Part shown: positions 1,819-62,217 of the stretch, in pieces
Position numbering within the stretch: position 1 is the first letter of the stretch
How the letters are laid out: every line of letters starts with the position of its first letter
IMG/VR virus record: IMGVR_UViG_3300015261_000002
Location: 1 to 64,000 of that record
Direction: 5' to 3' (one strand)
DNA length: 64,000 nt
Program-made: the position numbers and the translations under genes
The notes under the pieces: model-generated
Database searches by the model: none
What the model was told of the DNA's origin: nothing
The model's input: the letters and a program-made list of their open reading frames with translations, nothing else

Positions 1819-2502
1819 ATGTCTGTCGACATCAGCAACTTTCTCATTGCCACACCGCTACCGGTCTCCATCACCAATCCGGTCGCCCTTGAAATCCCAG
1901 GCCTCGAAGCCCTGGAACGCTGTCCTGAAGTGATTCGCTTACTGGAGGATGGATCTCTTCAGATGTCTGCTTTAACGCTGGGAGCATCGAGTAAGAGCGT
2001 TAAGCGTACCCGCTGTGAATGGAAAGAGTCCGAGTACTGGTCTCTGGGTAGTGCGGACCGTCATTGGAGCCGCCAAGAAATGATCCTGGAAAAGGTCAAT
2101 GCTGCCCAAAAGGTGGTCATTGGTCAGATCCATGTCAAGAACGCTAACACCCCGCCTCTGAAGGTGTTCTGGAACCGGGGCAATATCACGGTAGGCTTCC
2201 GAGCCAGCTACGATAAACCCGATATCAAAAACTTCACTGTTCATGCAGGCGTTCCTCTGGGCGCCAAGTTCAAACTGAACATCGGGGTTACCCGAGCGGG
2301 TAAAGTGCAGATCAATGGTACTTGCAACGGGGTGGCATTCGAACCGTGCAATCTGCAAATGAACTACTCCTGGCAAAGACAGCTGCTGCAATTCCACGGC
2401 GGCGTCTACAACCAGGTTGATTACTCCGATGAAACCGCAGCCGATGATGGGTCGGTGTGCGTTATCAAAGCGCTGACTGTTTCACACAGTTCCGTCGAGT
2501 AG
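1819..2502 (+). CDS. Polysaccharide lyase family 7 (alginate-lyase-like)
   Basis: PL7 motifs RTRCEWKE (RxELR-like), VIGQIH and FHGGVYNQ (YFKAGxYxQ-like). Confidence 0.85.
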   Translation: MSVDISNFLIATPLPVSITNPVALEIPGLEALERCPEVIRLLEDGSLQMSALTLGASSKSVKRTRCEWKESEYWSLGSADRHWSRQEMILEKVNAAQKVVIGQIHVKNANTPPLKVFWNRGNITVGFRASYDKPDIKNFTVHAGVPLGAKFKLNIGVTRAGKVQINGTCNGVAFEPCNLQMNYSWQRQLLQFHGGVYNQVDYSDETAADDGSVCVIKALTVSHSSVE

Positions 2503-2550: not shown

Positions 2551-5500
2551 TTACGCGCGTTTACGTTCTCGCAACATACGTTTAGCCCTTTCGAGTTTGG
2601 CGTCCTCGATAAGACTGTCCACGGTGAGGAGTTTCGCTGTTTCTGGAGGAAGCAGTTTGCTGAGCTTGTTGATCTCAGCTTCCAGACGCATCGCCAGGAT
2701 GTTGTCGTTGGTGTTCAACAGCTCATCCGTCAACTTCTGCACACGTTTCTTGATGTTGTCCATGAACGAGATAATGCTTGGATCAACTTCAGGAGCGCTC
2801 TTCTGCTTACCGGCGTCAAGGAGGTTACGCGTCTCCGACAACTGAATCCCGGTAGGAATCCCGTACATCGGTTTGTTTTGTCCCAACTTGATAAACCAGT
2901 ACGTCAGCAACCAGGCGATAACCAAGTCATCGTGCTGTTTACTGTCGTGGTCGATACGGTCTCCTTTCGTCTTGAGGTTGATCAACTCATCAGCCAGTCG
3001 ATCGTAGTTCAGCCCATACCCCGTTACCCCCACAGCTTCCTGAATTAAACCGTACAGGACTTCACGGGATTTAGCCGTGGTGTTAAATCCAAAGAACTGT
3101 TTGTACTTCAGGTAGAAGCTCTTACTGCGGTGAGCGAACTTGGTGTGCTGAACAGCCTCGTACTCCTTCGAATGGTTGACCGGGTCCTGGAAGATCTGGT
3201 TGTAGATCTTCGTGAACGGATCCATCCCTTTTGCCGGCAACATCACGAGGAGGTTATCGATCATGTGGTGAGCGTAGTTGCGTTCAATCACCAGCAGACT
3301 GTTTTCAAAGGTGGCCAGCATGTCCACAATGATCCCGGTTACATCATCCAGGAAAGCCAACTGATAACGTCCCACCCCAATCACCTTACCGGTTCGCATA
3401 CTGCGGATAATCAGCGTACAGGCGTCCTTGTTGATAGCCGATGAGGTATCCACCCCAATGAGGAAGAAGTCGTTATGGCTCTTCTTCGCCATCTCCAGCA
3501 GTTCTTGCTGCGTGACAAAGAAGTCTACAAACAGACCACTGTCACGATACTCCTTACTCCACACCTTATCCCGCTTCACGTTGTTGATCGCTTCACGGGT
3601 GATGTCGTCGAACACACGGTTCTCACCGTCTTCAACCCACATCAACAGCAAGTCGATCTTAGCCTTAGCCAAACTGAGGTTCAGGCTGTCAATCGTTTCA
3701 CGGACCCAGGCTTTGTCCTTGCCGAGTTGCAGGTAGTTATACACCAAGGCCACAGACGGTGACGTGGTCTTCTTCGGAGACGCTTTCAGCAATCGCATCT
3801 TCAGATGGCTTTCGCTGTAGGAGTCAAAGAACTTCTCACGCCACTCGGTCGACGTCATCAGCTTCTCAAACATGAACTCACCGCTTGGGTGAAGGGTCGT
3901 GTTTGGTGTCGTGATGTAACTGATCCCGTAAGGAATACCGCTGTCACGACAAATCTCCATCTCTGTCAGAGCAGAAGGAGAGCATCCGTTGATGATCGCC
4001 TCGATCCAGTTAATGTAACCTGGCTCGTCGTAGTTCGTGGTGCCTACCGTGAGACCCCGTCCAAGGTCACCTGCGGCGTCTTCACCCATCTGGGGTACCG
4101 AGATGGTCAGGGTGTTAACGTGCTCCTCCCCAAACGCTTTATACGTCAGGTAGTTACCCGCGTCCTTGTCTTTCCAGGTTGGGTTAACAAGGTACTTCGG
4201 CAAACAGGTTCGGATCTTTTTGATCGCGTCAATGAACTGAGCCCGGTTATCCGACTTCAGTGTCACAAGGTGAGACTTGTAGCCGCGCCCCATGATGTAC
4301 GTCAGCCAGAAAGCAATCACCTGTACCGATACCGTGTTGTGGGTGACCAGGAAGTCGTCAGTGACGTAGAGGTGTTCCTCGTTGTCGACTTCAATGCAGG
4401 TGCACGGTGCTTCACCGTAGTACTCGATCCGATCTACAAACAAACGGTTGTCGAATACAAACTCATCTTCAACGGTCTTGTACTTAAACAAAGCCATCGA
4501 AGCAGGAAGCGTAACCGTGAACTTACTGCCTTCCTTCAAAGCAGTGCCACCCAGTCCACGAGCGAGATACTGTACGTGACCGCCTACAAGCCTGCTGGAG
4601 GTCTTGTAGATGACACCCTCATCGCCGACTACTCCTTGGTCCAGAAACGCCTGTAACAGCAACAGGCGATCTTCCCAGGCCCCTTCCAGGTAGTCTACAG
4701 GCACCCCAAGCTCAGGATCGATAGAGATCTTCACATTCTCATCGGTCGAATGAATCTCACGACGATTACCCTTACAGACGAGTTCCAACCCTTCAGGCAG
4801 GTTCTCAACCAAGAAAGCATCGCAAGCATCCGACACCTTTTTGATCAACAGGTAACCACCAATCTGCTGAGCCCCGATCAAGGTCCCCATGACATACGGG
4901 TTGATCTTGAAGGTCTTTGCTTCTCCCTTCTCGGTCTCAATCAGTGGGAACTCAAGTTTAACCCCATCCTTGAGTTTCGTGATCATCTCGGCAGTCGTGT
5001 AGTCATCCCAGATGGGTTCGTCGTTAACCGTACGACCGTGGTCTGCCAGAGTCCACAGGTGCTCAGGCCCTGCGCTGACATAACGACCATCACTGGCATA
5101 AACACGGTACAGCCGTTTGATACCTTGAGCGTGGATACCGATAACCGTGGACTTCTTGCCGTAGCGATCGATAACCTCATCACCGGCTTGCAGATCCCCA
5201 ATCCGTCTCCAGGTCCCATCAGCCATGCGAACCTTGTCATTGTCATCCTGGTACTTGCCCTGTTGACGAGGCATGATCATGTACTGGGTGATGTGGTTCA
5301 GGTAGTTCCAGATAAAACTGATGTTCCCCCGATTCGCAAGGAACTGTCGGTCTGCCCGCAACTTACACACCTCACGGAGGAAGTACCAGAAGTTGGTCTC
5401 GCTCTCGTGCATGATCATGACTTTCTGTTCGTTTGTCAGATCGTCAGCGTAAGGGTCTACCCCGATAAGGGCCGGGTTGTTCAGTTGCAGCAGGAAGTTA

Positions 5501-5808
5501 AAGTTCTTAATCCCCTGTTGCCGAAAGATCTCAGCGGTCCGGATGAAACTGGTGTTACGGGTGGTGGTGTCAGGAATTGCACGATAACGAGCAAAGTCCT
5601 TTAGGAATCGAACGGTCTTGATCTTTGACAAACTGTCTTCATTGAAGTGAGCCATGATCAGCTCATCTTCGGTACGCTTCTCCCAGTCGACCCGGTTCTT
5701 ACGGTCGTCAATCAATTCACGTGGAAGGTTTTGTGCCCCAAGGTAATTCATGAGGTCTTTGGCAAACTTGAGCTGGCCCTCGTCTGCCGTATTCTCGGCT
5801 GTAGTCAT
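2551..5808 (-). CDS. terL: Terminase large subunit containing an intein
   Basis: After intein removal: Walker A PRQQGK|T, Walker B YDE, nuclease motif LIGVDTS. Position divergent from the sheath/tube genes matches phiKZ-like phages. ATG at 5808 preferred over GTG at 5826. Confidence 0.92.
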   Translation of the reverse strand: MTTAENTADEGQLKFAKDLMNYLGAQNLPRELIDDRKNRVDWEKRTEDELIMAHFNEDSLSKIKTVRFLKDFARYRAIPDTTTRNTSFIRTAEIFRQQGIKNFNFLLQLNNPALIGVDPYADDLTNEQKVMIMHESETNFWYFLREVCKLRADRQFLANRGNISFIWNYLNHITQYMIMPRQQGKYQDDNDKVRMADGTWRRIGDLQAGDEVIDRYGKKSTVIGIHAQGIKRLYRVYASDGRYVSAGPEHLWTLADHGRTVNDEPIWDDYTTAEMITKLKDGVKLEFPLIETEKGEAKTFKINPYVMGTLIGAQQIGGYLLIKKVSDACDAFLVENLPEGLELVCKGNRREIHSTDENVKISIDPELGVPVDYLEGAWEDRLLLLQAFLDQGVVGDEGVIYKTSSRLVGGHVQYLARGLGGTALKEGSKFTVTLPASMALFKYKTVEDEFVFDNRLFVDRIEYYGEAPCTCIEVDNEEHLYVTDDFLVTHNTVSVQVIAFWLTYIMGRGYKSHLVTLKSDNRAQFIDAIKKIRTCLPKYLVNPTWKDKDAGNYLTYKAFGEEHVNTLTISVPQMGEDAAGDLGRGLTVGTTNYDEPGYINWIEAIINGCSPSALTEMEICRDSGIPYGISYITTPNTTLHPSGEFMFEKLMTSTEWREKFFDSYSESHLKMRLLKASPKKTTSPSVALVYNYLQLGKDKAWVRETIDSLNLSLAKAKIDLLLMWVEDGENRVFDDITREAINNVKRDKVWSKEYRDSGLFVDFFVTQQELLEMAKKSHNDFFLIGVDTSSAINKDACTLIIRSMRTGKVIGVGRYQLAFLDDVTGIIVDMLATFENSLLVIERNYAHHMIDNLLVMLPAKGMDPFTKIYNQIFQDPVNHSKEYEAVQHTKFAHRSKSFYLKYKQFFGFNTTAKSREVLYGLIQEAVGVTGYGLNYDRLADELINLKTKGDRIDHDSKQHDDLVIAWLLTYWFIKLGQNKPMYGIPTGIQLSETRNLLDAGKQKSAPEVDPSIISFMDNIKKRVQKLTDELLNTNDNILAMRLEAEINKLSKLLPPETAKLLTVDSLIEDAKLERAKRMLRERKRA
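4336..5253 (-). mobile_element. 306-aa class-3-type intein (Tyr1) with degenerate LAGLIDADG remnants
   Basis: YQDDNDKVRMADG...IGDL...EHLW...CTCIEVD...VTHN|T, inserted between K and T of Walker A. Confidence 0.9.
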
Positions 5809-5848
5809 GATAGGTTCCCATTGCACATCAAAAAATAAAAGATACTCG

Positions 5849-5897: not shown

Positions 5898-6128
5898 TTA
5901 CTTCAGGATCGACGCAGGGACACCAACTTCGGGATCCACTGGTTCTGCTTCTTCTTTCAGACGCTCATGAGTCGTCACAGCGCGGTTGTCGTAGATCAGC
6001 ACTTCACGGCTTTCACCGTTTTGCAGTGTGAACTGTTCGAACAGGCTACCGTCGGTGATGTTGAACACCTGGACCAGCACTTCTTTCGTATCCGCACAAT
6101 GAGCGGCAACCTTAACTTGCGATGTCAT
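5898..6128 (-). CDS. Small hypothetical protein (76 aa)
   Basis: RBS GGAG; fills the gap in a minus-strand operon. Confidence 0.75.
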   Translation of the reverse strand: MTSQVKVAAHCADTKEVLVQVFNITDGSLFEQFTLQNGESREVLIYDNRAVTTHERLKEEAEPVDPEVGVPASILK

Positions 6129-6160
6129 ACATTTCTCCGATAGGGATTACACGTATAACA

Positions 6161-7882
6161 TTAAGGCGCCAACTCCACGGTTACACCGGTCATGCCCAGT
6201 TGCAACTCAACGCCAGAGACGTCTTTGTTGATCCAGTTGACGTACCACGTCTTGCCCTTTTGCATGGCAATGGTGATCGCATTGGTCTGGTTCCAGGCTG
6301 TAATCGGGAACCGCCATTTACGGCCATCTTCATGCATCAGGTCGAAGTGAGTCGCCACCGGCGCCTTGTCTTCGTTGAAGATGTCGTAGCTTGGGTAGAT
6401 CGACCAGTACATCACGTTCAGCCACTCGTCGATGTGATCCTGACCGTTAGCAATGGTAAACGTGGTGTTAGCCCCGTTGTTCTTCGCCACGACATTCAAC
6501 GCCGTGTAGGCTGGCTTGCCGTAGGAGTAGTTGACACTCCAACGCTTGCCTGGACCGTTTACATCTTTCAACAACACAATCTCGGTGTGCTGAATGAACG
6601 GCACACTTTCATACGTCTGAGCGACGTCTTTGAGGTTGATGTTGAAGATGAGTGCCTGCGACAGACCATACGACGACGGTTTGTAGACCGGGCTCTTGTC
6701 GTTATAGGTAACCACCGCAGTAACGTCGGTAAACGTCTTGCGATCGAGGTCGTACAGGAAGTGCTGCAAACGGTAACCGTTGAGCGACGCATCCCATTGA
6801 GGGTAGGTGAAGATCCGTGGGCTGTAAGCACCCTTGGCTGCACCGGCCTCGAAGGTGTAGGTGTGTCGGGCAAAGTTCGGGTTACCCGGCTGAGCGACGT
6901 CATGCTGCTCGTTCGGGGCCAGTTTCTTGATCAACACCACGTCAGCACTTTGACCTGGGAACTTCGGACGGTATTCGTTAACGCCATGCAGCGTGTACTC
7001 ACCACCGTTGACCGGACCAGGTTCAGAAGTCGAACCGTCAGAGTAATGCGTAACCGCTCGCAGTTCGACAGACGACAGTTGAACGTTGACCGGAATGATC
7101 AGACGATCGCGATCGCTCACATGAGTGAACCATGGCGACAGCAGTTCCACACCGGTGACGTACTTGACGCCGATGTTGTGGTCTTTCATGTACGCCGAAT
7201 GCTGAACCATCAAAGGCTGAGCAGGCGGGATGAACGTTTCGCCATCGAAGAACACCAGCCAAGCACGCGTGCCATCCGGCAGAGCGAGTTCGTTCTTCGT
7301 TACGCTGAACGCACCGGTCGTCATGATCGACTTGTTCGTGTACTCGTTGATCAAGGCCAACTTAACCGGAACGGTCTTGCTGATCATGTTCATCGATTGG
7401 TCGTACTGAGCCGAGATGATGTTACCCTCGACAGCGGCATTACCCAGGTATACGAATGCATGGGTAGCACCCGGACGCATGATCGTCGCATCCACACGCG
7501 CCACGTTAGGGCGTACGGAGTAGTCGATCGACAGCAGAGCTTCACCGGCCATTGGACCACCACGGAGACCGTAGATGTAGTCCTGGTCGGTGGTGTTACC
7601 TTCGTCAACGTTGGTCAGGCGCCAAGGCACCAGGGTCGACTTCAGGGTAGCCTGCCAGTCCACTTTGGCAACGAGGTAAATCATGCCGTTAGGAGGATCA
7701 AACACCAGCTCCCCTTCCTGGGGCACAACGTACTTGGTCAGATCACTTGGTGGATGGACGTCTGGATCATAAATGTTCCAGAGGTAGTGGAAGTTTTTGC
7801 GTTCACCGGTGTTGAGGGGATGGATGTTCGTCCCCGCAACCGCAGCAATCGCGTTAGACAACGGCGACTGGTCAAACAGCAT
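6161..7882 (-). CDS. Virion structural protein (phiKZ gp26-like by synteny)
   Basis: 573-aa beta-rich ORF next to the terminase in the conserved block. Confidence 0.7.
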   Translation of the reverse strand: MLFDQSPLSNAIAAVAGTNIHPLNTGERKNFHYLWNIYDPDVHPPSDLTKYVVPQEGELVFDPPNGMIYLVAKVDWQATLKSTLVPWRLTNVDEGNTTDQDYIYGLRGGPMAGEALLSIDYSVRPNVARVDATIMRPGATHAFVYLGNAAVEGNIISAQYDQSMNMISKTVPVKLALINEYTNKSIMTTGAFSVTKNELALPDGTRAWLVFFDGETFIPPAQPLMVQHSAYMKDHNIGVKYVTGVELLSPWFTHVSDRDRLIIPVNVQLSSVELRAVTHYSDGSTSEPGPVNGGEYTLHGVNEYRPKFPGQSADVVLIKKLAPNEQHDVAQPGNPNFARHTYTFEAGAAKGAYSPRIFTYPQWDASLNGYRLQHFLYDLDRKTFTDVTAVVTYNDKSPVYKPSSYGLSQALIFNINLKDVAQTYESVPFIQHTEIVLLKDVNGPGKRWSVNYSYGKPAYTALNVVAKNNGANTTFTIANGQDHIDEWLNVMYWSIYPSYDIFNEDKAPVATHFDLMHEDGRKWRFPITAWNQTNAITIAMQKGKTWYVNWINKDVSGVELQLGMTGVTVELAP

Positions 7883-10544
7883 TGTTGTTCACCTCGAAGT
7901 AACCTTCAATCACGCAGACCGATTCCAGGTAGAGATCGTTAACCTGTTTGAAGAAGATGAGTTGTTTATCCGACACGGTGAGTTTACCGTAGTTAGCAAA
8001 CGGGGTAATAGCGAAATAACGACGGTCATACTTCAGCGTTACCGGGTCATACTTCAGCCACCAGACGTAAGACTTAAGAGCATCCTTGATGTCTTGGTTG
8101 CTGTAATAGGTATCACCGTCCGATTGGTTGGGCAAGCGGATCAAACCGTTCAGCACACCGTTTACCACCACGTTCATGAACGGGCTGTACAAACGGTATT
8201 TGTCTTGCAGGTTTGGAATCACCGCGCTACCAATGCCGGCCGGACGTTGGGGATCCCCATTTTCCCAGTGAATCTCTTCGTCATTCGTTTGAGGTTTCGG
8301 CAGGTACTTGGTCAGGTAGTCACTCACACGCTGATCGGTTTCACGGCTGCGTTGACGATAAGGCAACTCGTCATAGTCTTCCACGAAACGAATCGGACAC
8401 CAGTGGTGCTTAACCATGTACGGCTTACCGTTCAGAGGGTTACCGATGTCATCAGGAACGTCTCGCTCTGCCCGCGGTACTTCATCGGTCAGGTAAAGGG
8501 CTCCATTAATAACCGTACGAGTAACTCGATCACCGCGCAGATTATAACGATCAACGCGACCGATAACCCCACCATCCACAAATCCCAGTTCGGTGTCAGC
8601 GTTCGGCAGCACCACAGTTTTATCGAGACCCATAGCACGGACAGTAATCGTCTGAGGCCCGTCAACGAGGAATTCCTTGTTGTTGATGTAGCAGTACTGG
8701 CCTTCATAGATCCAATCCACTTTGTCAACCAACGGATGGCCGTTCAGCCAAATGTCGATCTGTGCCCAGGTCAGGCCGGTCAGGTGACCACCATCTTCGT
8801 AAATGTCCGTGATCGCAAACGCAAGGCTGTGATCCATGTGCTCGAGTTGGAACTGGTAACCGAGGATCTTCTTGTTGCTGATGAGGATCCCACGCTTGTT
8901 GACCCGGTCCAGCCCTTTCCAGATCAGCAGCCCATTCTCGATGCGATACATCGCTGGGTCACCTGTCACGTTCGTCCAGGGTCCAACGAGTTCGTTGAGG
9001 TTGATATTCCAACCTGACGTGTAAACCTGATAGTCCCAATCTTTCGAGACTTCAACGTCTTGGTTAGTAACCACCATGTCGAGGGTACGACCGGTAGAGC
9101 CCATCGTGAACTCAACCATGGCACAGGCTGGATTGTTCGGCGAGTAGTAAAGAACACCACTCATGTTCCGCCATTCCAACAGCTGACCGTTCTCGTCATG
9201 CTCCCAGGCTGTACAAGCCTCCTGGTAGGTCGCAGGGATGTCGACACCCCGGCTGCCTAGCAAGTAGGTCGCTCGAACCGGCGTCTCGCTCAGAACGCGT
9301 GTGGCGGCGTTGTAGCCTACCGACATGATGGCGTCTTCACGCTTCACATTCTTCCACTGCTTACGCAACAGCTTCATGACCGGACCTTGTTCCAATTGCT
9401 TAGCTGTCCATTCCGGCATGTTTGCCCGTGCGTCCACCATGGCTCGCATGATGTCGATGTCAGGCATCCGGTACAGGTAACGGATACGCTGATGTTCATG
9501 AGGCCACTGGAAGGTCCAGGCGGTCTTACGAATCAACACAAGGATACGGCAGTCGGCGATGTTCGACAGATCCGGGTGGTATTCGGTTGCTGCGTGCAAG
9601 ACATCGTCCGCAATGGCCACGTCCACATGGGTCAGTTGACGAATGGTCTTCTCATCATTGCGATGCAGATAAACCCCACGACGCTTACCACCCATCCAGT
9701 AGTAGTCGTTGTCGTCAAAGTAGCGAATGGTGAAATCGCCTTTGATCTTTGGTGGGTGCAGGATAACCTTGTCCTTCAGATCCATCTCGGAGTAGAAGGC
9801 CTGTAGCTGGTTGTACGCGTACAGTTCCGAGCGCAGCACCGTTGGGTCATGCCAGAACTCGATCACGTCACCCGGTGCAATCGGGTTGATCACAGAAGGC
9901 GGACCGTTGATGATCGTCCCGTTATGGAACAAGCCTGTGTAACCAGGCCGTGCCTTGACCGTTGCATAACGACCGAGGAACGTGCTGTATTCCGACGGGT
10001 TCTCGTACACACAGGTTTCAAGAATAAACGGGTTACCGGTTTCATTGGTAACGAGTCGGCTCTTGTCCACGAGGACCGAAGGCGTGTAGCAACGGAAGTG
10101 CATGTCGTCGCCATTCTTCACCGGAGTCTTGCTGAGCTTTTGAATCGCGATCAGAACAAGACCGTCGTAAGTCACCATGATCCAGCAGTGGCTACGGCTC
10201 TGCATGTAACCTTTCGTCGAATACACGTCGGTCAGCAAACCACGGGACTTGCACAACATCCCCAGGTTCACCCAACGGTCCAACGGATTGCGACGCAGCG
10301 TGTTGTTCTTGAAGTTCCAGTAACCTGGATGGAGACCACCTACCGAGAACACGTGGAAGAACGTATTCTTTTTCGGCAAGGACCGCCACTTGTTCATGTA
10401 GCTGAAGTTGGAACTGTAACCGTATTCCTCGGTAATGCGATTAAGCTTTACCTGGTACTGCTGGTTCTCTTCCGGATTAGACCAGAGATGATCGTCCGTG
10501 TATCGAACCAGCGGCGTATTGTCTTCCGGTCCACGAATACCCAT
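7872..10544 (-). CDS. Virion structural protein (phiKZ gp27-like by synteny)
   Basis: 890-aa ORF overlapping the next gene; size and position match the conserved block. Confidence 0.7.
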   Translation of the reverse strand: MGIRGPEDNTPLVRYTDDHLWSNPEENQQYQVKLNRITEEYGYSSNFSYMNKWRSLPKKNTFFHVFSVGGLHPGYWNFKNNTLRRNPLDRWVNLGMLCKSRGLLTDVYSTKGYMQSRSHCWIMVTYDGLVLIAIQKLSKTPVKNGDDMHFRCYTPSVLVDKSRLVTNETGNPFILETCVYENPSEYSTFLGRYATVKARPGYTGLFHNGTIINGPPSVINPIAPGDVIEFWHDPTVLRSELYAYNQLQAFYSEMDLKDKVILHPPKIKGDFTIRYFDDNDYYWMGGKRRGVYLHRNDEKTIRQLTHVDVAIADDVLHAATEYHPDLSNIADCRILVLIRKTAWTFQWPHEHQRIRYLYRMPDIDIMRAMVDARANMPEWTAKQLEQGPVMKLLRKQWKNVKREDAIMSVGYNAATRVLSETPVRATYLLGSRGVDIPATYQEACTAWEHDENGQLLEWRNMSGVLYYSPNNPACAMVEFTMGSTGRTLDMVVTNQDVEVSKDWDYQVYTSGWNINLNELVGPWTNVTGDPAMYRIENGLLIWKGLDRVNKRGILISNKKILGYQFQLEHMDHSLAFAITDIYEDGGHLTGLTWAQIDIWLNGHPLVDKVDWIYEGQYCYINNKEFLVDGPQTITVRAMGLDKTVVLPNADTELGFVDGGVIGRVDRYNLRGDRVTRTVINGALYLTDEVPRAERDVPDDIGNPLNGKPYMVKHHWCPIRFVEDYDELPYRQRSRETDQRVSDYLTKYLPKPQTNDEEIHWENGDPQRPAGIGSAVIPNLQDKYRLYSPFMNVVVNGVLNGLIRLPNQSDGDTYYSNQDIKDALKSYVWWLKYDPVTLKYDRRYFAITPFANYGKLTVSDKQLIFFKQVNDLYLESVCVIEGYFEVNNNAV

Positions 10545-57604: not shown

Positions 57605-59332
57605 TTACACCTGACGAATCGATCCAACTTCAATGCCGTCATCGCCTTCAACTACCTGACGGTAGGTGTACGGTTTGATGTACGGGCACTGAACGTCGAG
57701 CAGATAGCCATAGACCGCATCGACAAAGCTTTGCGTGTAGCTGTTCAGGATCTGCTTCTTGAAGTCCAGCTCTTCGTTTTCGATCGGAGTCGGGCGACCT
57801 TCTTCGTGATACTCGTAAACGACCCACTCGTTCAGATCGAGACCGATGTTGCCGCCGTGAGCGGTCAGCTTCGTGATCACTTCGTTCGCCACTTCTTCCA
57901 TGTACTTGACGCCGTACGCTGGAGAGAAACCGTAGACACGGTTCAGGAAGTGACTCGACGCCATCAGTTGTTCTTTGAGGTTGGTGTCAAAGATCTCCTG
58001 AATCATCGGATGCGGGTTGATCATGTCGCGGTGCTTCTGGAACATGCGATTGATCTGGCGCGTGCCGTGGCTGATGCGCTTGACGTTGACCTGAACGGAC
58101 TTGCTGTACGAAGACCACTCGAAGATGTTGATCGGTTCATCACCGAGAACGATCTCCCCGGATTCAGGCAGACGAGGGTAAACGCGATCCAGCGCAACGT
58201 TCATCTCTTTCAGACCATTGACACCCTTGAAGCTCAGGTAGAGGTCGTGGTCTTTTTCCTTGACGAGGTCGGCCAGTTTCAGAGCGATACGGTTGAGTTC
58301 AGACAGACGACCACGGAGGTCTTCGTTCATGCGCTCGCAGACTTCTTTGACGAGGGTAAAGTCGCCATCTACGAGTTCATCGATCGGCTCTTTGCTGAAC
58401 GAGAGCGGGAAGAAGGACAGCGGCAACTCTATAGGCGCCTGGGTTACATTGAGGTTGAAACCCCGCTCGGAGTGACGACGTTGGTGGGTCCACTTCATCG
58501 GGTCTTCGCCTTCCATCTCGTAGAAGAAGACCGGAATGTCCTTGCTCCGAACAACAAACGAGCGCGACACTTCATCCACCTGGAAACGGAACCAGGTCAC
58601 TTCCTGATCGCCATCCATGCCGAGGTAACGGAAGATACGCAGATAGACAGGATACGTCAGGTCGATGCGGGGGTCGTGTGCCACTACGCTGAACGGCACA
58701 TCGGTAACCGCCATCATGAAGAAACGGATCAACGCGGCGGTAGTCTTTGGAAGACTGTCGTCACGGTTCGGGAAGATCTGCGGCAGCGAGTGCATTGCGT
58801 TGGCGAGCATGCCGGCGATGTTGGCTTCCTTGGTGCTACTGGCAAAGCTTTCCACCGGACCAACTTTAATCGTGGCGTCATCGGTACCTTCTTTTGGTGT
58901 GGTCATGTCCTTCAGAAGCTCACCGAAGCTTTCAGGGGAGTGCGTTTCAACAAGAACAGCATCACCCGCTTGATGCAGTACCTGAGCCTCGCCGTCGGCA
59001 ATAACGAGTTCACCTTTTTCATCACGTTCGTGAACTGGCTGTTCGTACGCCAATGGAACACGATCACCGGCTTCGTTGGTGGTCTCAACAGGCAGCTCCA
59101 TAACTTCTGCCAGTTTGTCCATGTGATTGTTCCAGTCGGTCAGCTGTACCGGGATACCTTCTGGCATCTTTTCGATGTAACCTTCTTTGGGAGCGTTAGC
59201 CCGAGTCTCTTCGACCAGCGTATGCCATTCTTCGTCAGTCCCAACAAAACCTTTTGCCACCGCATTTTCGTAGGAAGCGTCAGGGTGGACGTAACCAATG
59301 TCACCGCCTACATCTTTCTTTTCATCGCTCAT
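57605..59332 (-). CDS. Hypothetical protein (575 aa) with an acidic N-terminal region
   Basis: Long ORF with strong codon bias and RBS GAGGG. Confidence 0.8.
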   Translation of the reverse strand: MSDEKKDVGGDIGYVHPDASYENAVAKGFVGTDEEWHTLVEETRANAPKEGYIEKMPEGIPVQLTDWNNHMDKLAEVMELPVETTNEAGDRVPLAYEQPVHERDEKGELVIADGEAQVLHQAGDAVLVETHSPESFGELLKDMTTPKEGTDDATIKVGPVESFASSTKEANIAGMLANAMHSLPQIFPNRDDSLPKTTAALIRFFMMAVTDVPFSVVAHDPRIDLTYPVYLRIFRYLGMDGDQEVTWFRFQVDEVSRSFVVRSKDIPVFFYEMEGEDPMKWTHQRRHSERGFNLNVTQAPIELPLSFFPLSFSKEPIDELVDGDFTLVKEVCERMNEDLRGRLSELNRIALKLADLVKEKDHDLYLSFKGVNGLKEMNVALDRVYPRLPESGEIVLGDEPINIFEWSSYSKSVQVNVKRISHGTRQINRMFQKHRDMINPHPMIQEIFDTNLKEQLMASSHFLNRVYGFSPAYGVKYMEEVANEVITKLTAHGGNIGLDLNEWVVYEYHEEGRPTPIENEELDFKKQILNSYTQSFVDAVYGYLLDVQCPYIKPYTYRQVVEGDDGIEVGSIRQV

Positions 59333-59373
59333 CTTTTTCCCTCTTTTTAAATGGGTGCCATCGGAGGCAGTTC

Positions 59374-62217
59374 ATGCTTAACTTATTTTCAGTTGCTGTA
59401 AGGCAAACTGGGGTCTTTGTACATATCACAGGAGTTTCATACGGCGCCCTGTCACGAGATATCGAGAAGTTCTACAGCAGTTCATTGCTCACCAAATGGC
59501 AGATCCGCCGAGAGACCTGGGATTCCATCAAGGTTCATAACTTCTTTCTGGTAGAGCTGCACATCATCCTGGGTGAACTGCTAAAGGTTCGTAACCTCCG
59601 TAGTCGTCGTAGAGAGTTGGCAGAATTAAAACACCTGCTTGAAACGGAAACCTGGATCAAAGATACTGTCAATCCTGCTGGTAAGCGGTTCGACTTCAAA
59701 AAGCTGGATCGCTTCAACGTGGTTCCTTTCCCGAAACAGCGTGAGTTTCTGGAACAGTACCCCATCATCAAACAGAGCTATCACCTTAAAGGATTGTTGC
59801 TCGATGCCGCAGTGGGTAGCGGTAAGGCGATGCCACTGAACACGCAAGTCAAGGTGCCGGGTGGCTGGAAGCGTCTTGGCGACCTTAAGATAGGTGACCA
59901 GGTGATAGGACCCAAGGGTAACGTCGCTAACGTCACAGGTTACTTCCCTCAAGGTGTAACCGAGAGTTTCCGTTTTACCTTTGAAGACGGACGTACTGCT
60001 GACTCTCACCCATTGCATTTGTGGGAAGTGGCGGAGTCAGGATTTGACGGCAGTGGTAATGCGGTGGGTCAGACCCATGTGACCACGACAAAGGATATCG
60101 TGAATCACTTCGACCAGTTCAGTTACCACATCCCATTGGTAGGTGATGTCGGTGACAGTATTGAACCGTCAGCACTCGACCTGGAGCAGATCGCCACCGG
60201 GCTGCTGACTGCTGGTATACATATGGCCGACCCAGTGACAGAACTTTCCTACGTGGATCGTCGTCAGATCGCCAAGCACATGATCGAAAAGTCGGGCTGT
60301 CATTTGTCTGAGGTTGGGGTGTCAGTAATCACCGATAATGCCTACGGCGCCACAAACTTCCAGAAGCTCATGTGGAGCCTTGGGGGCGTCGCTAACCTCG
60401 AAACCTTTGGTGACCTGTTCAAGGTTAGCTTTAAGCACCGAGACATCGCCTGGCTCGTCGACAGCCTTGTATTGGAGTCCCTCGGTAACATCCTCGACGT
60501 TACCCAGTACATGAACCTGAAGTTGAAGCTGGTCGCCATCCAGCAGCAGCCGCAGATCGAAACCGCCTGCATCAGTATTGACAGTGAAGACTGCCTTTAC
60601 ATCGTTGACAACTGGATCGTCACGCACAACACCGTAACCTCGTTGATGTGGTCGATGCTTGTCAGTGATAACAAATGCATCATCGTCTGCCCTCTGAACA
60701 TCGTTGAAGAAGTTTGGCTGGGCAACATGAGGAAGCGCCTCAAAGAGATGCCGCGGGTATGGACGTCTACGTCAGGTCGTTTGTTAACGGACGATTACGA
60801 CTACTACATCATCCACTACGAATTCCTCCAGGGGAATCACTACGACCACATGCGTAAATGGTTTAACGAAGCCATGAAGCGCAACAAGAAGAAGTTCAGC
60901 TTGATCGTCGATGAGTCTCACAACTTTAACGACATCAAGTCTAAGCAGACTCGCCGGTTAGTAGAGTTGGCGGACGATGGGTTGTTCGAAGACTCCCTAC
61001 CGATGTCTGGGACACCGCTGAAGGCACTTGGGAGTGAGATCTACCCCATCACCTGCCTTATCGACAAACACTTCGACAAGCCGGCCAGAGAGTTCTTCAT
61101 GGCGAGCTATGGACGTAACCGTCCCGCGCTAATCTCGTTGTTGGCCAACCGTATCGGGCGTGGGAAGTTCTCCATTCCTGAACTGGCTGGTATGGGCGAT
61201 CCTCCTCCGTTTGAGATCATCAAGGTTAAAATCCCCGACGGGGATAAGTACACCCTGGAATCCATTCGCCTGGAGATGCAGAACTACATTGTGGAACGGT
61301 TCGCGTTCTACAGTAAGCACATGGCGCAGTTCATCGTGTTCTATAACGATGTAATTCAGCGCTATGAGTATTCGATCGCTAAACAACCCAAAGAACTTGC
61401 TGACCTGAAACGCTACAAGGCTATCGTTAACCGCTTCCGTACCCAGGGGTATAACAACTTCACGGACTCGGTCGACAGCGCCTTCTGCAAGGCTGTAGAG
61501 GAGGATATTGAACGTGGTCTAAAAGGTCCTGAGCTGGCTGAGTTCCGTAATGTGAAATCGGCCGTTAAGTACCTGGCGTTGAAGATCCGTGGTGAGGCGT
61601 TGGGTAATGTCTTGAGTCGTGCTCGTATCAATGCGATTAAAGACTTGATCGCGCACGCTGAACTGCCTAAGTACATCAACGACGTAGAGAAGAAAACCTT
61701 GATTTTTACCTCTTACGTCGAAGCCTTGAAACTCTCGGTAGACTACTTGGCTGCCCAGGGCTTTAAGCCTGTATCGGTGTACGGTGAGAACAGCAGTGAA
61801 CGTGACGCCACCGTCAAGCTGTTTGCCGAAGATCCAAAGATCAACCCGCTGACAGCCACGTACAACAGTCTGAAAGAAGGTTACCCGATGTTGATGGCTA
61901 ACCAGATCATTGGACTGGACTCCCCATTCAGGGAACATGAACTGCGACAAGTAAAAGGAAGGATCTGGCGCACCGGTCAGGATGCCGCCCAGTGTTTCTT
62001 CCGTATGCTGGATATGGATACCGGAGATAAGCTCAACATCACCACGCGCAGTCTGGACATCCTGGCCTGGAGTAAAGAACAGGTAGATGCCTTGATGGGT
62101 CGCATGGAAGGTCACGTGGCGTTTGCTAACGTAACCGGTGAGGAGTGTCTCGATATCAGCGAAGAATTAATCGGTCGTCCGTTGAAGATGACTAACAGTG
62201 TTCTCTCACTCTTTTAA
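59374..62217 (+). CDS. SF2 (SNF2-like) helicase containing an intein
   Basis: GSGK|T, VDESH, MSGTP and GRIWRTGQ motifs; RBS GGAGG before MLNLFS. Confidence 0.88.
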   Translation: MLNLFSVAVRQTGVFVHITGVSYGALSRDIEKFYSSSLLTKWQIRRETWDSIKVHNFFLVELHIILGELLKVRNLRSRRRELAELKHLLETETWIKDTVNPAGKRFDFKKLDRFNVVPFPKQREFLEQYPIIKQSYHLKGLLLDAAVGSGKAMPLNTQVKVPGGWKRLGDLKIGDQVIGPKGNVANVTGYFPQGVTESFRFTFEDGRTADSHPLHLWEVAESGFDGSGNAVGQTHVTTTKDIVNHFDQFSYHIPLVGDVGDSIEPSALDLEQIATGLLTAGIHMADPVTELSYVDRRQIAKHMIEKSGCHLSEVGVSVITDNAYGATNFQKLMWSLGGVANLETFGDLFKVSFKHRDIAWLVDSLVLESLGNILDVTQYMNLKLKLVAIQQQPQIETACISIDSEDCLYIVDNWIVTHNTVTSLMWSMLVSDNKCIIVCPLNIVEEVWLGNMRKRLKEMPRVWTSTSGRLLTDDYDYYIIHYEFLQGNHYDHMRKWFNEAMKRNKKKFSLIVDESHNFNDIKSKQTRRLVELADDGLFEDSLPMSGTPLKALGSEIYPITCLIDKHFDKPAREFFMASYGRNRPALISLLANRIGRGKFSIPELAGMGDPPPFEIIKVKIPDGDKYTLESIRLEMQNYIVERFAFYSKHMAQFIVFYNDVIQRYEYSIAKQPKELADLKRYKAIVNRFRTQGYNNFTDSVDSAFCKAVEEDIERGLKGPELAEFRNVKSAVKYLALKIRGEALGNVLSRARINAIKDLIAHAELPKYINDVEKKTLIFTSYVEALKLSVDYLAAQGFKPVSVYGENSSERDATVKLFAEDPKINPLTATYNSLKEGYPMLMANQIIGLDSPFREHELRQVKGRIWRTGQDAAQCFFRMLDMDTGDKLNITTRSLDILAWSKEQVDALMGRMEGHVAFANVTGEECLDISEELIGRPLKMTNSVLSLF
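59827..60630 (+). mobile_element. 268-aa class-3-type intein (Ala1) with a decayed endonuclease region
   Basis: AMPLNTQV..PGGWKRLGDL...LHLW...TACISID...VTHN|T, inserted in Walker A. Confidence 0.9.

What the first reader, a model, noticed from the sequence alone, without database searches (positions are those of the whole stretch)
4336..5253. Terminase intein that begins with tyrosine
Seen: removing 306 aa restores Walker A (PRQQGK|TVSV), which fixes intein residue 1 as Tyr (TAC at 5253-5251). Standard inteins need Cys or Ser at position 1. The class 3 triplet is present: block B Trp (EHLW), block F Cys (CTCIEV), block G Thr (VTHN), with Thr at +1. Class 3 inteins initiate with the block F Cys and typically start with Ala or Pro. 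A bulky Tyr1 in an essential gene implies splicing still works, and could make DNA packaging conditional on splicing.
Basis: partly seen in the sequence, partly recalled or inferred. Interest (0 to 1): 0.75.

Follow-up and report, generated by a model that had tools for sequence, protein, structure and literature searches.

The report
Class 3 terminase intein starting with tyrosine
The large terminase gene of this soil jumbo phage is interrupted in its ATP-binding loop by a real self-splicing intein that begins with tyrosine, but this is an ordinary variant of a known intein class in which the first residue is not catalytic and varies freely.

Summary
The terminase (TerL) ORF at 2551-5826 (-) carries a 306-aa intein at 4336-5253. 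It lies between Lys and Thr of Walker A (PRQQGK|T), begins with Tyr (TAC 5253-5251) and ends THN|T.

Intein-less TerLs of phiKZ-type phages align with a gap over exactly these 306 residues. The Tyr is not a sequencing error. Six independent metagenome assemblies (42-81% intein identity) also have Tyr there, encoded by TAC or TAT.

It has every sequence hallmark of a class 3 intein: His65/Trp67, Cys286, Thr304-His305-Asn306 and Thr+1. Its closest solved structures are class 3 DnaB inteins.

The claim that Tyr1 is exceptional fails. Class 3 inteins are defined by a non-nucleophilic residue 1. Among 308 Trp-Cys-Thr inteins I collected, residue 1 is A, M, P, L, F, E, S, Y, D, Q or G. Within the orthologous jumbo-phage TerL inteins it changed at least 23 times, and Tyr falls in at least 4 separate groups.

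Phages EL, RisingSun, Miami and Aphrodite1 carry the same intein at the same site with Q, L, N and E.

The homing-endonuclease motifs have decayed, which points to a fixed, vertically inherited intein.

Verdict: a new member of a known kind, of low interest.

The parts
2551..5826 (-). Large terminase (TerL) precursor ORF, 1091 aa from the first GTG. The likely real start is the ATG at 5808, giving 1085 aa, as in the identical database protein P0001.
   Evidence: It is 63% identical to phage EL gp011 'terminase large subunit' and 59% to RisingSun gp240. The N-extein hits PHROG 2, terminase large subunit, at 4.8e-34. It is the only TerL copy in the 224,747-bp genome.
5254..5271 (-). First half of Walker A (P-R-Q-Q-G-K); Lys191 is residue -1 of the intein.
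   Evidence: G190 and K191 are invariant in alignments A1 and A2. In intein-less homologues the motif runs straight on into T/S.
4336..5253 (-). Class 3 intein, 306 aa (Tyr1 to Asn306).
   Evidence: The gap in intein-less TerLs matches exactly. The AlphaFold2 model has pLDDT 97. Its best fold matches are intein-homing endonucleases (PI-SceI, TliVMA), and the class 3 DnaB inteins 6BS8/6RIX also match. The best sequence matches among solved structures are 6RIX, 6BS8 and 6RIY, all class 3.
5251..5253 (-). Intein residue 1, Tyr (TAC), non-nucleophilic.
   Evidence: It aligns with position 1 of block A (V8, M10-A11-D12-G13 are in register). Relatives use both TAC and TAT.
5053..5061 (-). Block B His65-Leu66-Trp67 (B:10 His and the class 3 Trp at B:12).
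   Evidence: H and W are invariant in 121 of 121 aligned sequences and in A3.
4396..4404 (-). Block F Cys284-Thr-Cys286. Cys286 is F:4, the predicted initiating nucleophile. Cys284 (F:2) is an optional second Cys.
   Evidence: F:4 Cys is invariant in 121 of 121. F:2 is Cys in 87 of 294 class 3 inteins and in 38 of 79 TerL-type ones.
4336..4344 (-). Block G Thr304-His305-Asn306 (class 3 Thr, penultimate His, cyclising Asn).
   Evidence: Invariant in 121 of 121.
4333..4335 (-). Thr+1, the C-extein nucleophile and also the Thr of Walker A (GKT).
   Evidence: T in 118 and S in 3 of 121. It aligns with T/S after GK in intein-less TerLs.
4462..4956 (-). Middle domain: a LAGLIDADG-type homing-endonuclease fold whose two catalytic acidic residues are lost (Ala128 where relatives have the Asp of GDG; Gly207 where relatives have the second Asp of DTDG).
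   Evidence: Motif alignment. No Pfam LAGLIDADG hit for the window, against 28 of 68 relatives. This part evolves faster (58-73% aa identity) than the splicing parts (73-90%).
2551..4335 (-). C-extein: the rest of the ATPase and the nuclease domain of TerL, plus the stop codon.
   Evidence: Alignments A1 and A2. It is 86-95% identical in the closest relatives, with mostly synonymous differences.

Best explanation
This is a functional class 3 intein resident in the P-loop of the only terminase large subunit of an EL-like jumbo phage. After translation, Cys286 (block F:4), helped by His65 and Trp67, attacks the Lys191-Tyr192 peptide bond and takes the N-extein as a thioester. The N-extein is then passed to the hydroxyl of Thr+1. 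Asn306 cyclises, assisted by His305, to release the intein. An O-to-N shift then forms the Lys-Thr bond, which completes Walker A (PRQQGKT). Tyr1 contributes only its backbone amide as leaving group, and its side chain is not catalytic. It is one of many interchangeable residues at a position that drifts, mostly among hydrophobic residues one nucleotide apart (Tyr TAC, Phe TTC, Leu, Met). The endonuclease domain has lost its catalytic residues, so the intein no longer homes and is inherited vertically with TerL. What is shown: the boundaries, the motifs, the fold, the variability of residue 1 and purifying selection on the splicing blocks. What is inferred: the chemistry, taken from studied class 3 inteins, and that splicing occurs at all, because TerL is single-copy and essential.
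For: Exact boundaries from intein-less homologues. The class 3 Trp-Cys-Thr (WCT) triplet, the His-Asn end and Thr/Ser+1 are invariant in 121 relatives. The nearest solved structures are class 3 inteins; the fold prediction has pLDDT 97 and intein fold matches. Residue 1 in 308 WCT inteins: A152, M29, P28, L23, F19, E12, S11, Y8, D7, Q5, G5. On a tree of 79 TerL-type inteins built without residue 1, there are at least 23 changes of residue 1, and Tyr falls in at least 4 groups even counting only well-supported branches. Named phages with the same intein at the same site have Q, L, M, N, E and L. Splicing blocks are under purifying selection: against P0002 the N-terminal splicing part shows 44 synonymous and 10 non-synonymous codon differences. 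The genome has a single TerL. Literature: class 3 is defined by a non-nucleophilic residue 1 co-varying with WCT, and is found in phage terminases and helicases, mostly in the P-loop. P1A, P1S and P1C mutants of the prototype still splice (PMC2807308).
Against: No experiment on this protein exists. Neither splicing nor dependence on Cys286 has been demonstrated. In the prototype, changing residue 1 lowered efficiency and raised side cleavage, so residue 1 is not strictly neutral. Tyr is uncommon (8 of 308), and in my sample it occurs only in the jumbo-phage TerL lineage.
Confidence: 0.85

Rival explanations
1. Tyr1 is functionally special. Its bulky phenol tunes or gates the first step, so that terminase maturation, and hence packaging, is conditional on temperature, redox state or timing.
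For: Residue 1 substitutions change splicing efficiency and side reactions in the prototype class 3 intein. Tyr has been kept through synonymous codon change within the window's clade of four 90%-identity clusters. A class 3 P-loop intein in M. smegmatis DnaB is a redox switch through its block F Cys (PMC6195587). Here a second Cys sits two residues before the catalytic Cys.
Against: Orthologous inteins in the same site of the same essential gene use A, M, L, F, P, Q, E, D, N or G, with at least 23 switches. The sister lineages of each Tyr group carry F, L or P. No other active-site residue changes along with Tyr. The second Cys is present in only about half of the TerL-type inteins and is not linked to Tyr.
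Confidence: 0.08
2. The insert is a dead intein that no longer splices, and the gene or the assembled phage is defective.
For: The homing endonuclease part is decayed. The genome is a metagenome assembly, not a cultured phage.
Against: Every splicing residue is intact and invariant. The splicing blocks show a strong excess of synonymous change. The insert splits Walker A of the only TerL in a genome rated 100% complete with terminal repeats. Cultured, viable phages (EL, RisingSun, FishSpeaker, Miami, Aphrodite1, AerS_266) carry the same intein.
Confidence: 0.03
3. The Tyr codon is a sequencing or assembly error, or the true splice site lies elsewhere so that residue 1 is a nucleophile.
For: None beyond the fact that the record comes from a single metagenome.
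Against: Six other assemblies have Tyr at this position, using both codons. An independent re-assembly of the source run is identical at about 71x word depth. There is no Cys, Ser or Thr within the first 13 residues. Any other boundary would remove the Walker A Lys or Thr.
Confidence: 0.01

Closest known systems
Class 3 inteins (prototype: mycobacteriophage Bethlehem DnaB intein; also D. radiodurans Snf2, M. smegmatis DnaBi1, M. chimaera DnaB1; PMC2807308, PMC6195587, PMC7664689)
   Same: Non-nucleophilic residue 1. Trp at B:12, Cys at F:4 and Thr at G:5. His-Asn end and Thr+1. Insertion after the Lys of an ATPase P-loop. An aromatic residue 10 positions after the F:4 Cys (Tyr296, matching Phe330 of the prototype). 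These are also the nearest solved structures by sequence.
   Different: Residue 1 is Tyr rather than Pro (Bethlehem) or Ala (DnaB inteins). Block B position 7 is Gly. A full-size but catalytically decayed LAGLIDADG domain is retained. Splicing is untested.
TerL P-loop intein of Pseudomonas phage EL gp011 and its orthologues in RisingSun/Joad, FishSpeaker, Miami, Aphrodite1 and AerS_266
   Same: Same host gene, same insertion point (GK|T) and the same class 3 signature. Intein identity is 30-43% and whole-protein identity 45-64%. EL-like members share the decayed endonuclease motifs.
   Different: Residue 1 is Q, L, M, N, E and L in those phages. Tyr1 appeared only in uncultured relatives (P0002-4, P0011, P0023, P0054, P0056).
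Mycobacteriophage TerL1-a 'classic P-loop' inteins (Kelley et al. 2016, PMC5050341)
   Same: The intein lies between the invariant Lys and the nucleophilic Thr of the TerL Walker A. Phage terminases are the main home of phage inteins.
   Different: A different, unrelated TerL family and different hosts. Many of those inteins still carry canonical LAGLIDADG endonucleases.

Membership tests
Class 3 intein | Hint (intein splicing) fold with blocks A, B, F and G | tested here: met
   AlphaFold2 model, pLDDT 97. Foldseek matches PI-SceI and TliVMA at E 1e-11 to 1e-12 and the class 3 DnaB inteins at about 5e-6. phmmer matches 6RIX and 6BS8.
Class 3 intein | No Cys/Ser/Thr nucleophile at intein residue 1 | tested here: met
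   Tyr1 (TAC 5253-5251). The boundary is fixed by intein-less TerLs.
Class 3 intein | Trp at block B position 12, two residues after the block B His | tested here: met
   His65-Leu-Trp67, invariant in 121 of 121.
Class 3 intein | Cys at block F position 4 | tested here: met
   Cys286, invariant in 121 of 121.
Class 3 intein | Thr at block G position 5, a C-terminal Asn, and Thr or Ser at +1 | tested here: met
   Thr304-His305-Asn306|Thr.
Class 3 intein | Splicing proceeds through a block F branched thioester and requires the F:4 Cys | not testable with these tools
   This needs a reporter assay with C286A/S, T+1A and N306A mutants.
LAGLIDADG homing endonuclease (active) | Two LAGLIDADG helices, each ending in a catalytic Asp or Glu | tested here: not met
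   The window has G-A-Q where relatives have G-D-G, and D-Q-G where relatives have D-T-D-G. No Pfam LAGLIDADG_3 hit. The fold is retained.
Terminase large subunit (jumbo-phage phiKZ/EL type) | Homology across ATPase and nuclease domains, with Walker A G-K-T/S restored on removing the insert | tested here: met
   Alignments A1 and A2. PHROG 2 hit for the N-extein. RefSeq annotation of the orthologues.

The most novel reading that the evidence does not exclude
The natural series of first residues (A, M, L, F, Y, P, Q, E, D, N, G) in one orthologous TerL intein is not neutral. It sets lineage-specific splicing rates. With Tyr1, and perhaps together with the Cys284-x-Cys286 pair, maturation of terminase is delayed or made redox-sensitive, so that it times DNA packaging in this phage.
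Probability: 0.08. Interest if true: 0.45.

Novelty: new member of a known kind. Interest (0 to 1): 0.15.

Why it matters
It matters little as a discovery. P-loop class 3 inteins in phage terminases were described in 2009-2010, and the same intein sits in published phages such as EL and RisingSun. Two things are mildly useful. First, the jumbo-phage TerL lineage offers a ready-made natural mutational scan of residue 1 of a class 3 intein: at least ten different residues in the same site of the same essential gene. That supports the view that the class 3 mechanism is indifferent to the side chain at position 1, and it could guide the choice of traceless-cleavage or split-intein scaffolds. Second, the intein is fixed across several jumbo-phage genera with a decayed endonuclease. 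That is a clear case of an intein that has stopped being mobile and is simply carried along.

Tried and rejected
- **Pfam on the whole protein and the insert.** Only a sub-threshold Hom_end_hint hit.
- **PHROGs on the C-extein.** Nothing at 1e-5. TerL identity therefore rests on the N-extein hit and on alignments to annotated TerLs.
- **Raw-read check of the codon.** Only Logan contigs were served, not reads. The source-run contig is identical but not independent. A second sample's contig is 91% identical without indels, but its base at 5251-5253 was not among the differences listed, so relatives' DNA was fetched instead.
- **Tori & Perler 2011 (PMC3133030).** Not held. The supplementary table of the 2010 paper listing the first residues of known class 3 inteins is not held either. 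Whether Tyr1 was already tabulated in InBase could therefore not be checked.
- **Pseudomonas phage vB_PQ1.** This was the best tblastn hit, but its TerL region is fragmented into many small genes, so it was not used.
- **Antisense ORFs 3805-4656 (+) and 4750-5604 (+).** Considered as possible antisense-encoded endonucleases. They have no Pfam hit and run out into the exteins, so they were rejected as compositional ORFs.
- **Automatic residue-1 census.** It mis-assigned three EL-like proteins (P0014, P0015, P0060), which were scored as K or V and wrongly counted among the non-TerL hosts, because of an insertion in block A. In the MAFFT alignment P0014 and P0015 have Pro1 and P0060 has Leu1. The counts are good to within a few.

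Full report
**What is there.** The window is the first 64 kb of a 224,747-bp virus record with direct terminal repeats, rated 100% complete. It was assembled from a rhizosphere metagenome. On the minus strand, ORF 2551-5826 encodes a 1091-aa protein, or 1085 aa from the ATG at 5808, which is the length of the identical database protein P0001. It is the large terminase (TerL). It is 63% identical to Pseudomonas phage EL gp011, 59% to Erwinia phage RisingSun gp240, and 45-57% to TerLs of FishSpeaker, Miami, Aphrodite1 and AerS_266. Its N-terminal part hits PHROG 2, 'terminase large subunit'. It is the only TerL in the genome.

**Checking the observation.** The sequence reads ...IMPRQQGK|YQDDNDKVRMADG ... 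EHLW ... PCTCIEVD ... FLVTHN|TVSVQ. TAC is at 5253-5251, the terminal AAC at 4338-4336 and Thr+1 at 4335-4333. Block A is in register with canonical inteins (V8, M10-A11-D12-G13), which puts Tyr at position 1. The boundaries are also confirmed independently. TerLs of phiKZ-type phage KTN4, of SPN3US and of Noxifer have no insert. They read PRQTGK-SVS, RQHGK-TVG and PRQTGK-SGS, and they align with a single gap over exactly residues 192-497 of the window protein.

**Is the Tyr codon real?** Only assembled contigs, not raw reads, were available. The source run's independent re-assembly is identical at about 71x word depth. A second sample holds a 91%-identical copy without indels. More telling is the DNA of six related TerLs from other samples, with 42-81% intein identity. 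All have Tyr at this position: five use TAC and one uses TAT, and the neighbouring Gln, Gly and Lys codons vary synonymously. A sequencing error is excluded.

**What kind of intein.** In an alignment of 120 database relatives plus the window, several residues are invariant: His65, Trp67, Cys286, Thr304, His305 and Asn306 (intein numbering). Position +1 is Thr in 118 and Ser in 3. This is the Trp-Cys-Thr (WCT) signature that defines class 3 inteins, together with a non-nucleophilic first residue and Thr/Ser+1 (Tori et al. 2010, PMC2807308). [quoted passage not shown] By sequence, the nearest solved structures are all class 3 or class-3-grafted inteins: 6RIX and 6RIY, 6BS8, and 6RIZ. An AlphaFold2 model built on 68 relatives has mean pLDDT 97. 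It matches intein-homing endonuclease structures such as PI-SceI and the TliVMA and PhoVMA inteins, as well as the class 3 DnaB mini-inteins.

**Is Tyr1 unusual?** No. In the seven named phages the same intein at the same site starts with Y (window), Q (EL), L (RisingSun), M (FishSpeaker), N (Miami), E (Aphrodite1) and L (AerS_266). I located 308 WCT inteins in 263 proteins from two database searches. Their residue 1 counts are:

| Residue 1 | Count |
|---|---|
| A | 152 |
| M | 29 |
| P | 28 |
| L | 23 |
| F | 19 |
| E | 12 |
| S | 11 |
| Y | 8 |
| D | 7 |
| Q | 5 |
| G | 5 |

A few others make up the rest. Three EL-like proteins were mis-scored by the automatic back-calculation, so the counts are good to within a few.

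Among the 79 TerL-type inteins the counts are M 21, L 19, F 11, A 10, Y 8, Q 3, then D, P and E at 2 each and G at 1. I built a maximum-likelihood tree of these 79 without residue 1. It needs at least 23 changes of that residue. Tyr forms at least four separate groups even if only well-supported branches are trusted:
- the window's clade (P0001-P0004);
- P0011, which sits inside a Phe clade;
- P0023, which sits next to a Pro pair;
- P0054 and P0056.

Tyr, Phe and Leu, and likewise Leu and Met, are single-nucleotide neighbours. In contrast to residue 1, residue 2 is Gln in 219 of 294. In the prototype class 3 intein, P1A, P1S and P1C mutants still splice, with reduced efficiency. But a bulky first residue is common: Phe and Tyr together make up about 9% of my sample.

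**How it most likely works.** The chemistry is inferred from studied class 3 inteins (PMC2807308, PMC4031507, PMC6195587).
1. Cys286 attacks the Lys191-Tyr192 amide bond and forms a branched thioester.
2. The N-extein is passed to the hydroxyl of Thr+1.
3. Asn306 cyclises and releases the intein.
4. The ester rearranges to a Lys-Thr peptide bond, which completes Walker A.

That splicing actually happens is also an inference. It rests on three points: the split Walker A in a single-copy essential gene, the invariant catalytic residues, and purifying selection. For example, against P0002 the N-terminal splicing part shows 44 synonymous and 10 non-synonymous codon differences. Packaging necessarily waits for splicing, as with any P-loop intein. 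I found nothing that links this to Tyr1 or shows regulation.

**The endonuclease part.** Relatives in helicases keep the two LAGLIDADG motifs (…LLGDG… and …LxDTDG…), and 28 of 68 hit Pfam LAGLIDADG_3. In the window and throughout the EL-like TerL clade, the catalytic Asp positions are replaced: Ala128 in G-A-Q and Gly207 in D-Q-G. The domain is also shorter, and it evolves faster than the splicing parts (58-73% against 73-90% identity). Every TerL of this clade that I examined has the intein. Together this fits a fixed, immobile, vertically inherited intein.

**Other inteins in the genome.** The genome holds two more class 3 inteins, both after a P-loop GK and both starting with Ala. One is in an SNF2-like helicase inside the window (59827-60630, +, 268 aa). 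The other is in a DEAD-like helicase at genome 193229-193984 (-, 252 aa). So the phage uses the commonest first residue (Ala) and Tyr side by side.

**Verdict.** The supposed anomaly, Tyr at position 1, is an uncommon but recurrent state of a hypervariable, non-catalytic position in a well-known intein class, at a well-known insertion site, in a gene whose cultured-phage orthologues carry the same intein. It is a new member of a known kind, and interest is low. I recall that InBase listed phage EL ORF11, ORF39 and ORF40 inteins, which would match the three seen here. That is from memory and was not checked.

Noticed in passing
window 59827-60630 (+), inside ORF 59254-62217: A second class 3 intein (268 aa) in the P-loop of an SNF2-like helicase: ...AVGSGK|AMPLNTQV...HLWEV...TACISID...IVTHN|TVTS. 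It starts with Ala and has the Trp/Cys/Thr triplet. No LAGLIDADG motif is recognisable.
   Followed up: partly
outside the window: genome G000:C1:193229-193984 (-), locus L011 ORF 2081-4417 (-): A third class 3 intein (252 aa) in the P-loop of a DEAD-like helicase (PTGGGK|ALANDT...DHQWEV...TTCIAVE...IVTHN|TYMG). It also starts with Ala. The genome therefore has three class 3 inteins, all after GK.
   Followed up: partly
window 4396-4404 (-): A Cys-x-Cys pair in block F: Cys284 lies two residues before the catalytic Cys286. A Cys at this position occurs in 87 of 294 class 3 inteins and in 38 of 79 TerL-type ones. It could form a redox or metal trap with the catalytic Cys, as another Cys does in M. 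smegmatis DnaBi1. This is untested.
   Followed up: partly
window 5248-5250 (-), intein residue 2: Residue 1 is hypervariable, but residue 2 is Gln in 219 of 294 class 3 inteins, across both terminase and helicase hosts. I did not find its role discussed in the papers I could read.
   Followed up: no
window 4462-4956 (-): The homing-endonuclease domain keeps its fold but has lost both catalytic acidic residues throughout the EL-like TerL clade. This indicates an intein that is fixed and no longer mobile.
   Followed up: yes
window 1819-2502 (+): The gene convergent with TerL encodes an alginate lyase (Pfam PF08787, E 2.7e-37). It is conserved at the same place in the closest relatives (L012, L013, L015). 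This hints at an alginate-producing host such as a rhizosphere Pseudomonas or Azotobacter.
   Followed up: partly
window 3805-4656 (+), 4750-5604 (+), 6122-7942 (+): Long open frames run antisense to TerL and to the neighbouring 573-aa gene. The two opposite TerL have no Pfam hit and run across the intein-extein borders. The one at 6122-7942 was not searched. They look like by-products of codon composition rather than genes.
   Followed up: partly
locus L022 (Pseudomonas phage vB_PQ1, PQ516283.1, 13454-17430): In this GenBank record the TerL-plus-intein region is annotated as a string of small genes and a 'CRISPR' repeat. It looks like a frameshift-ridden assembly of an EL-like phage.
   Followed up: no
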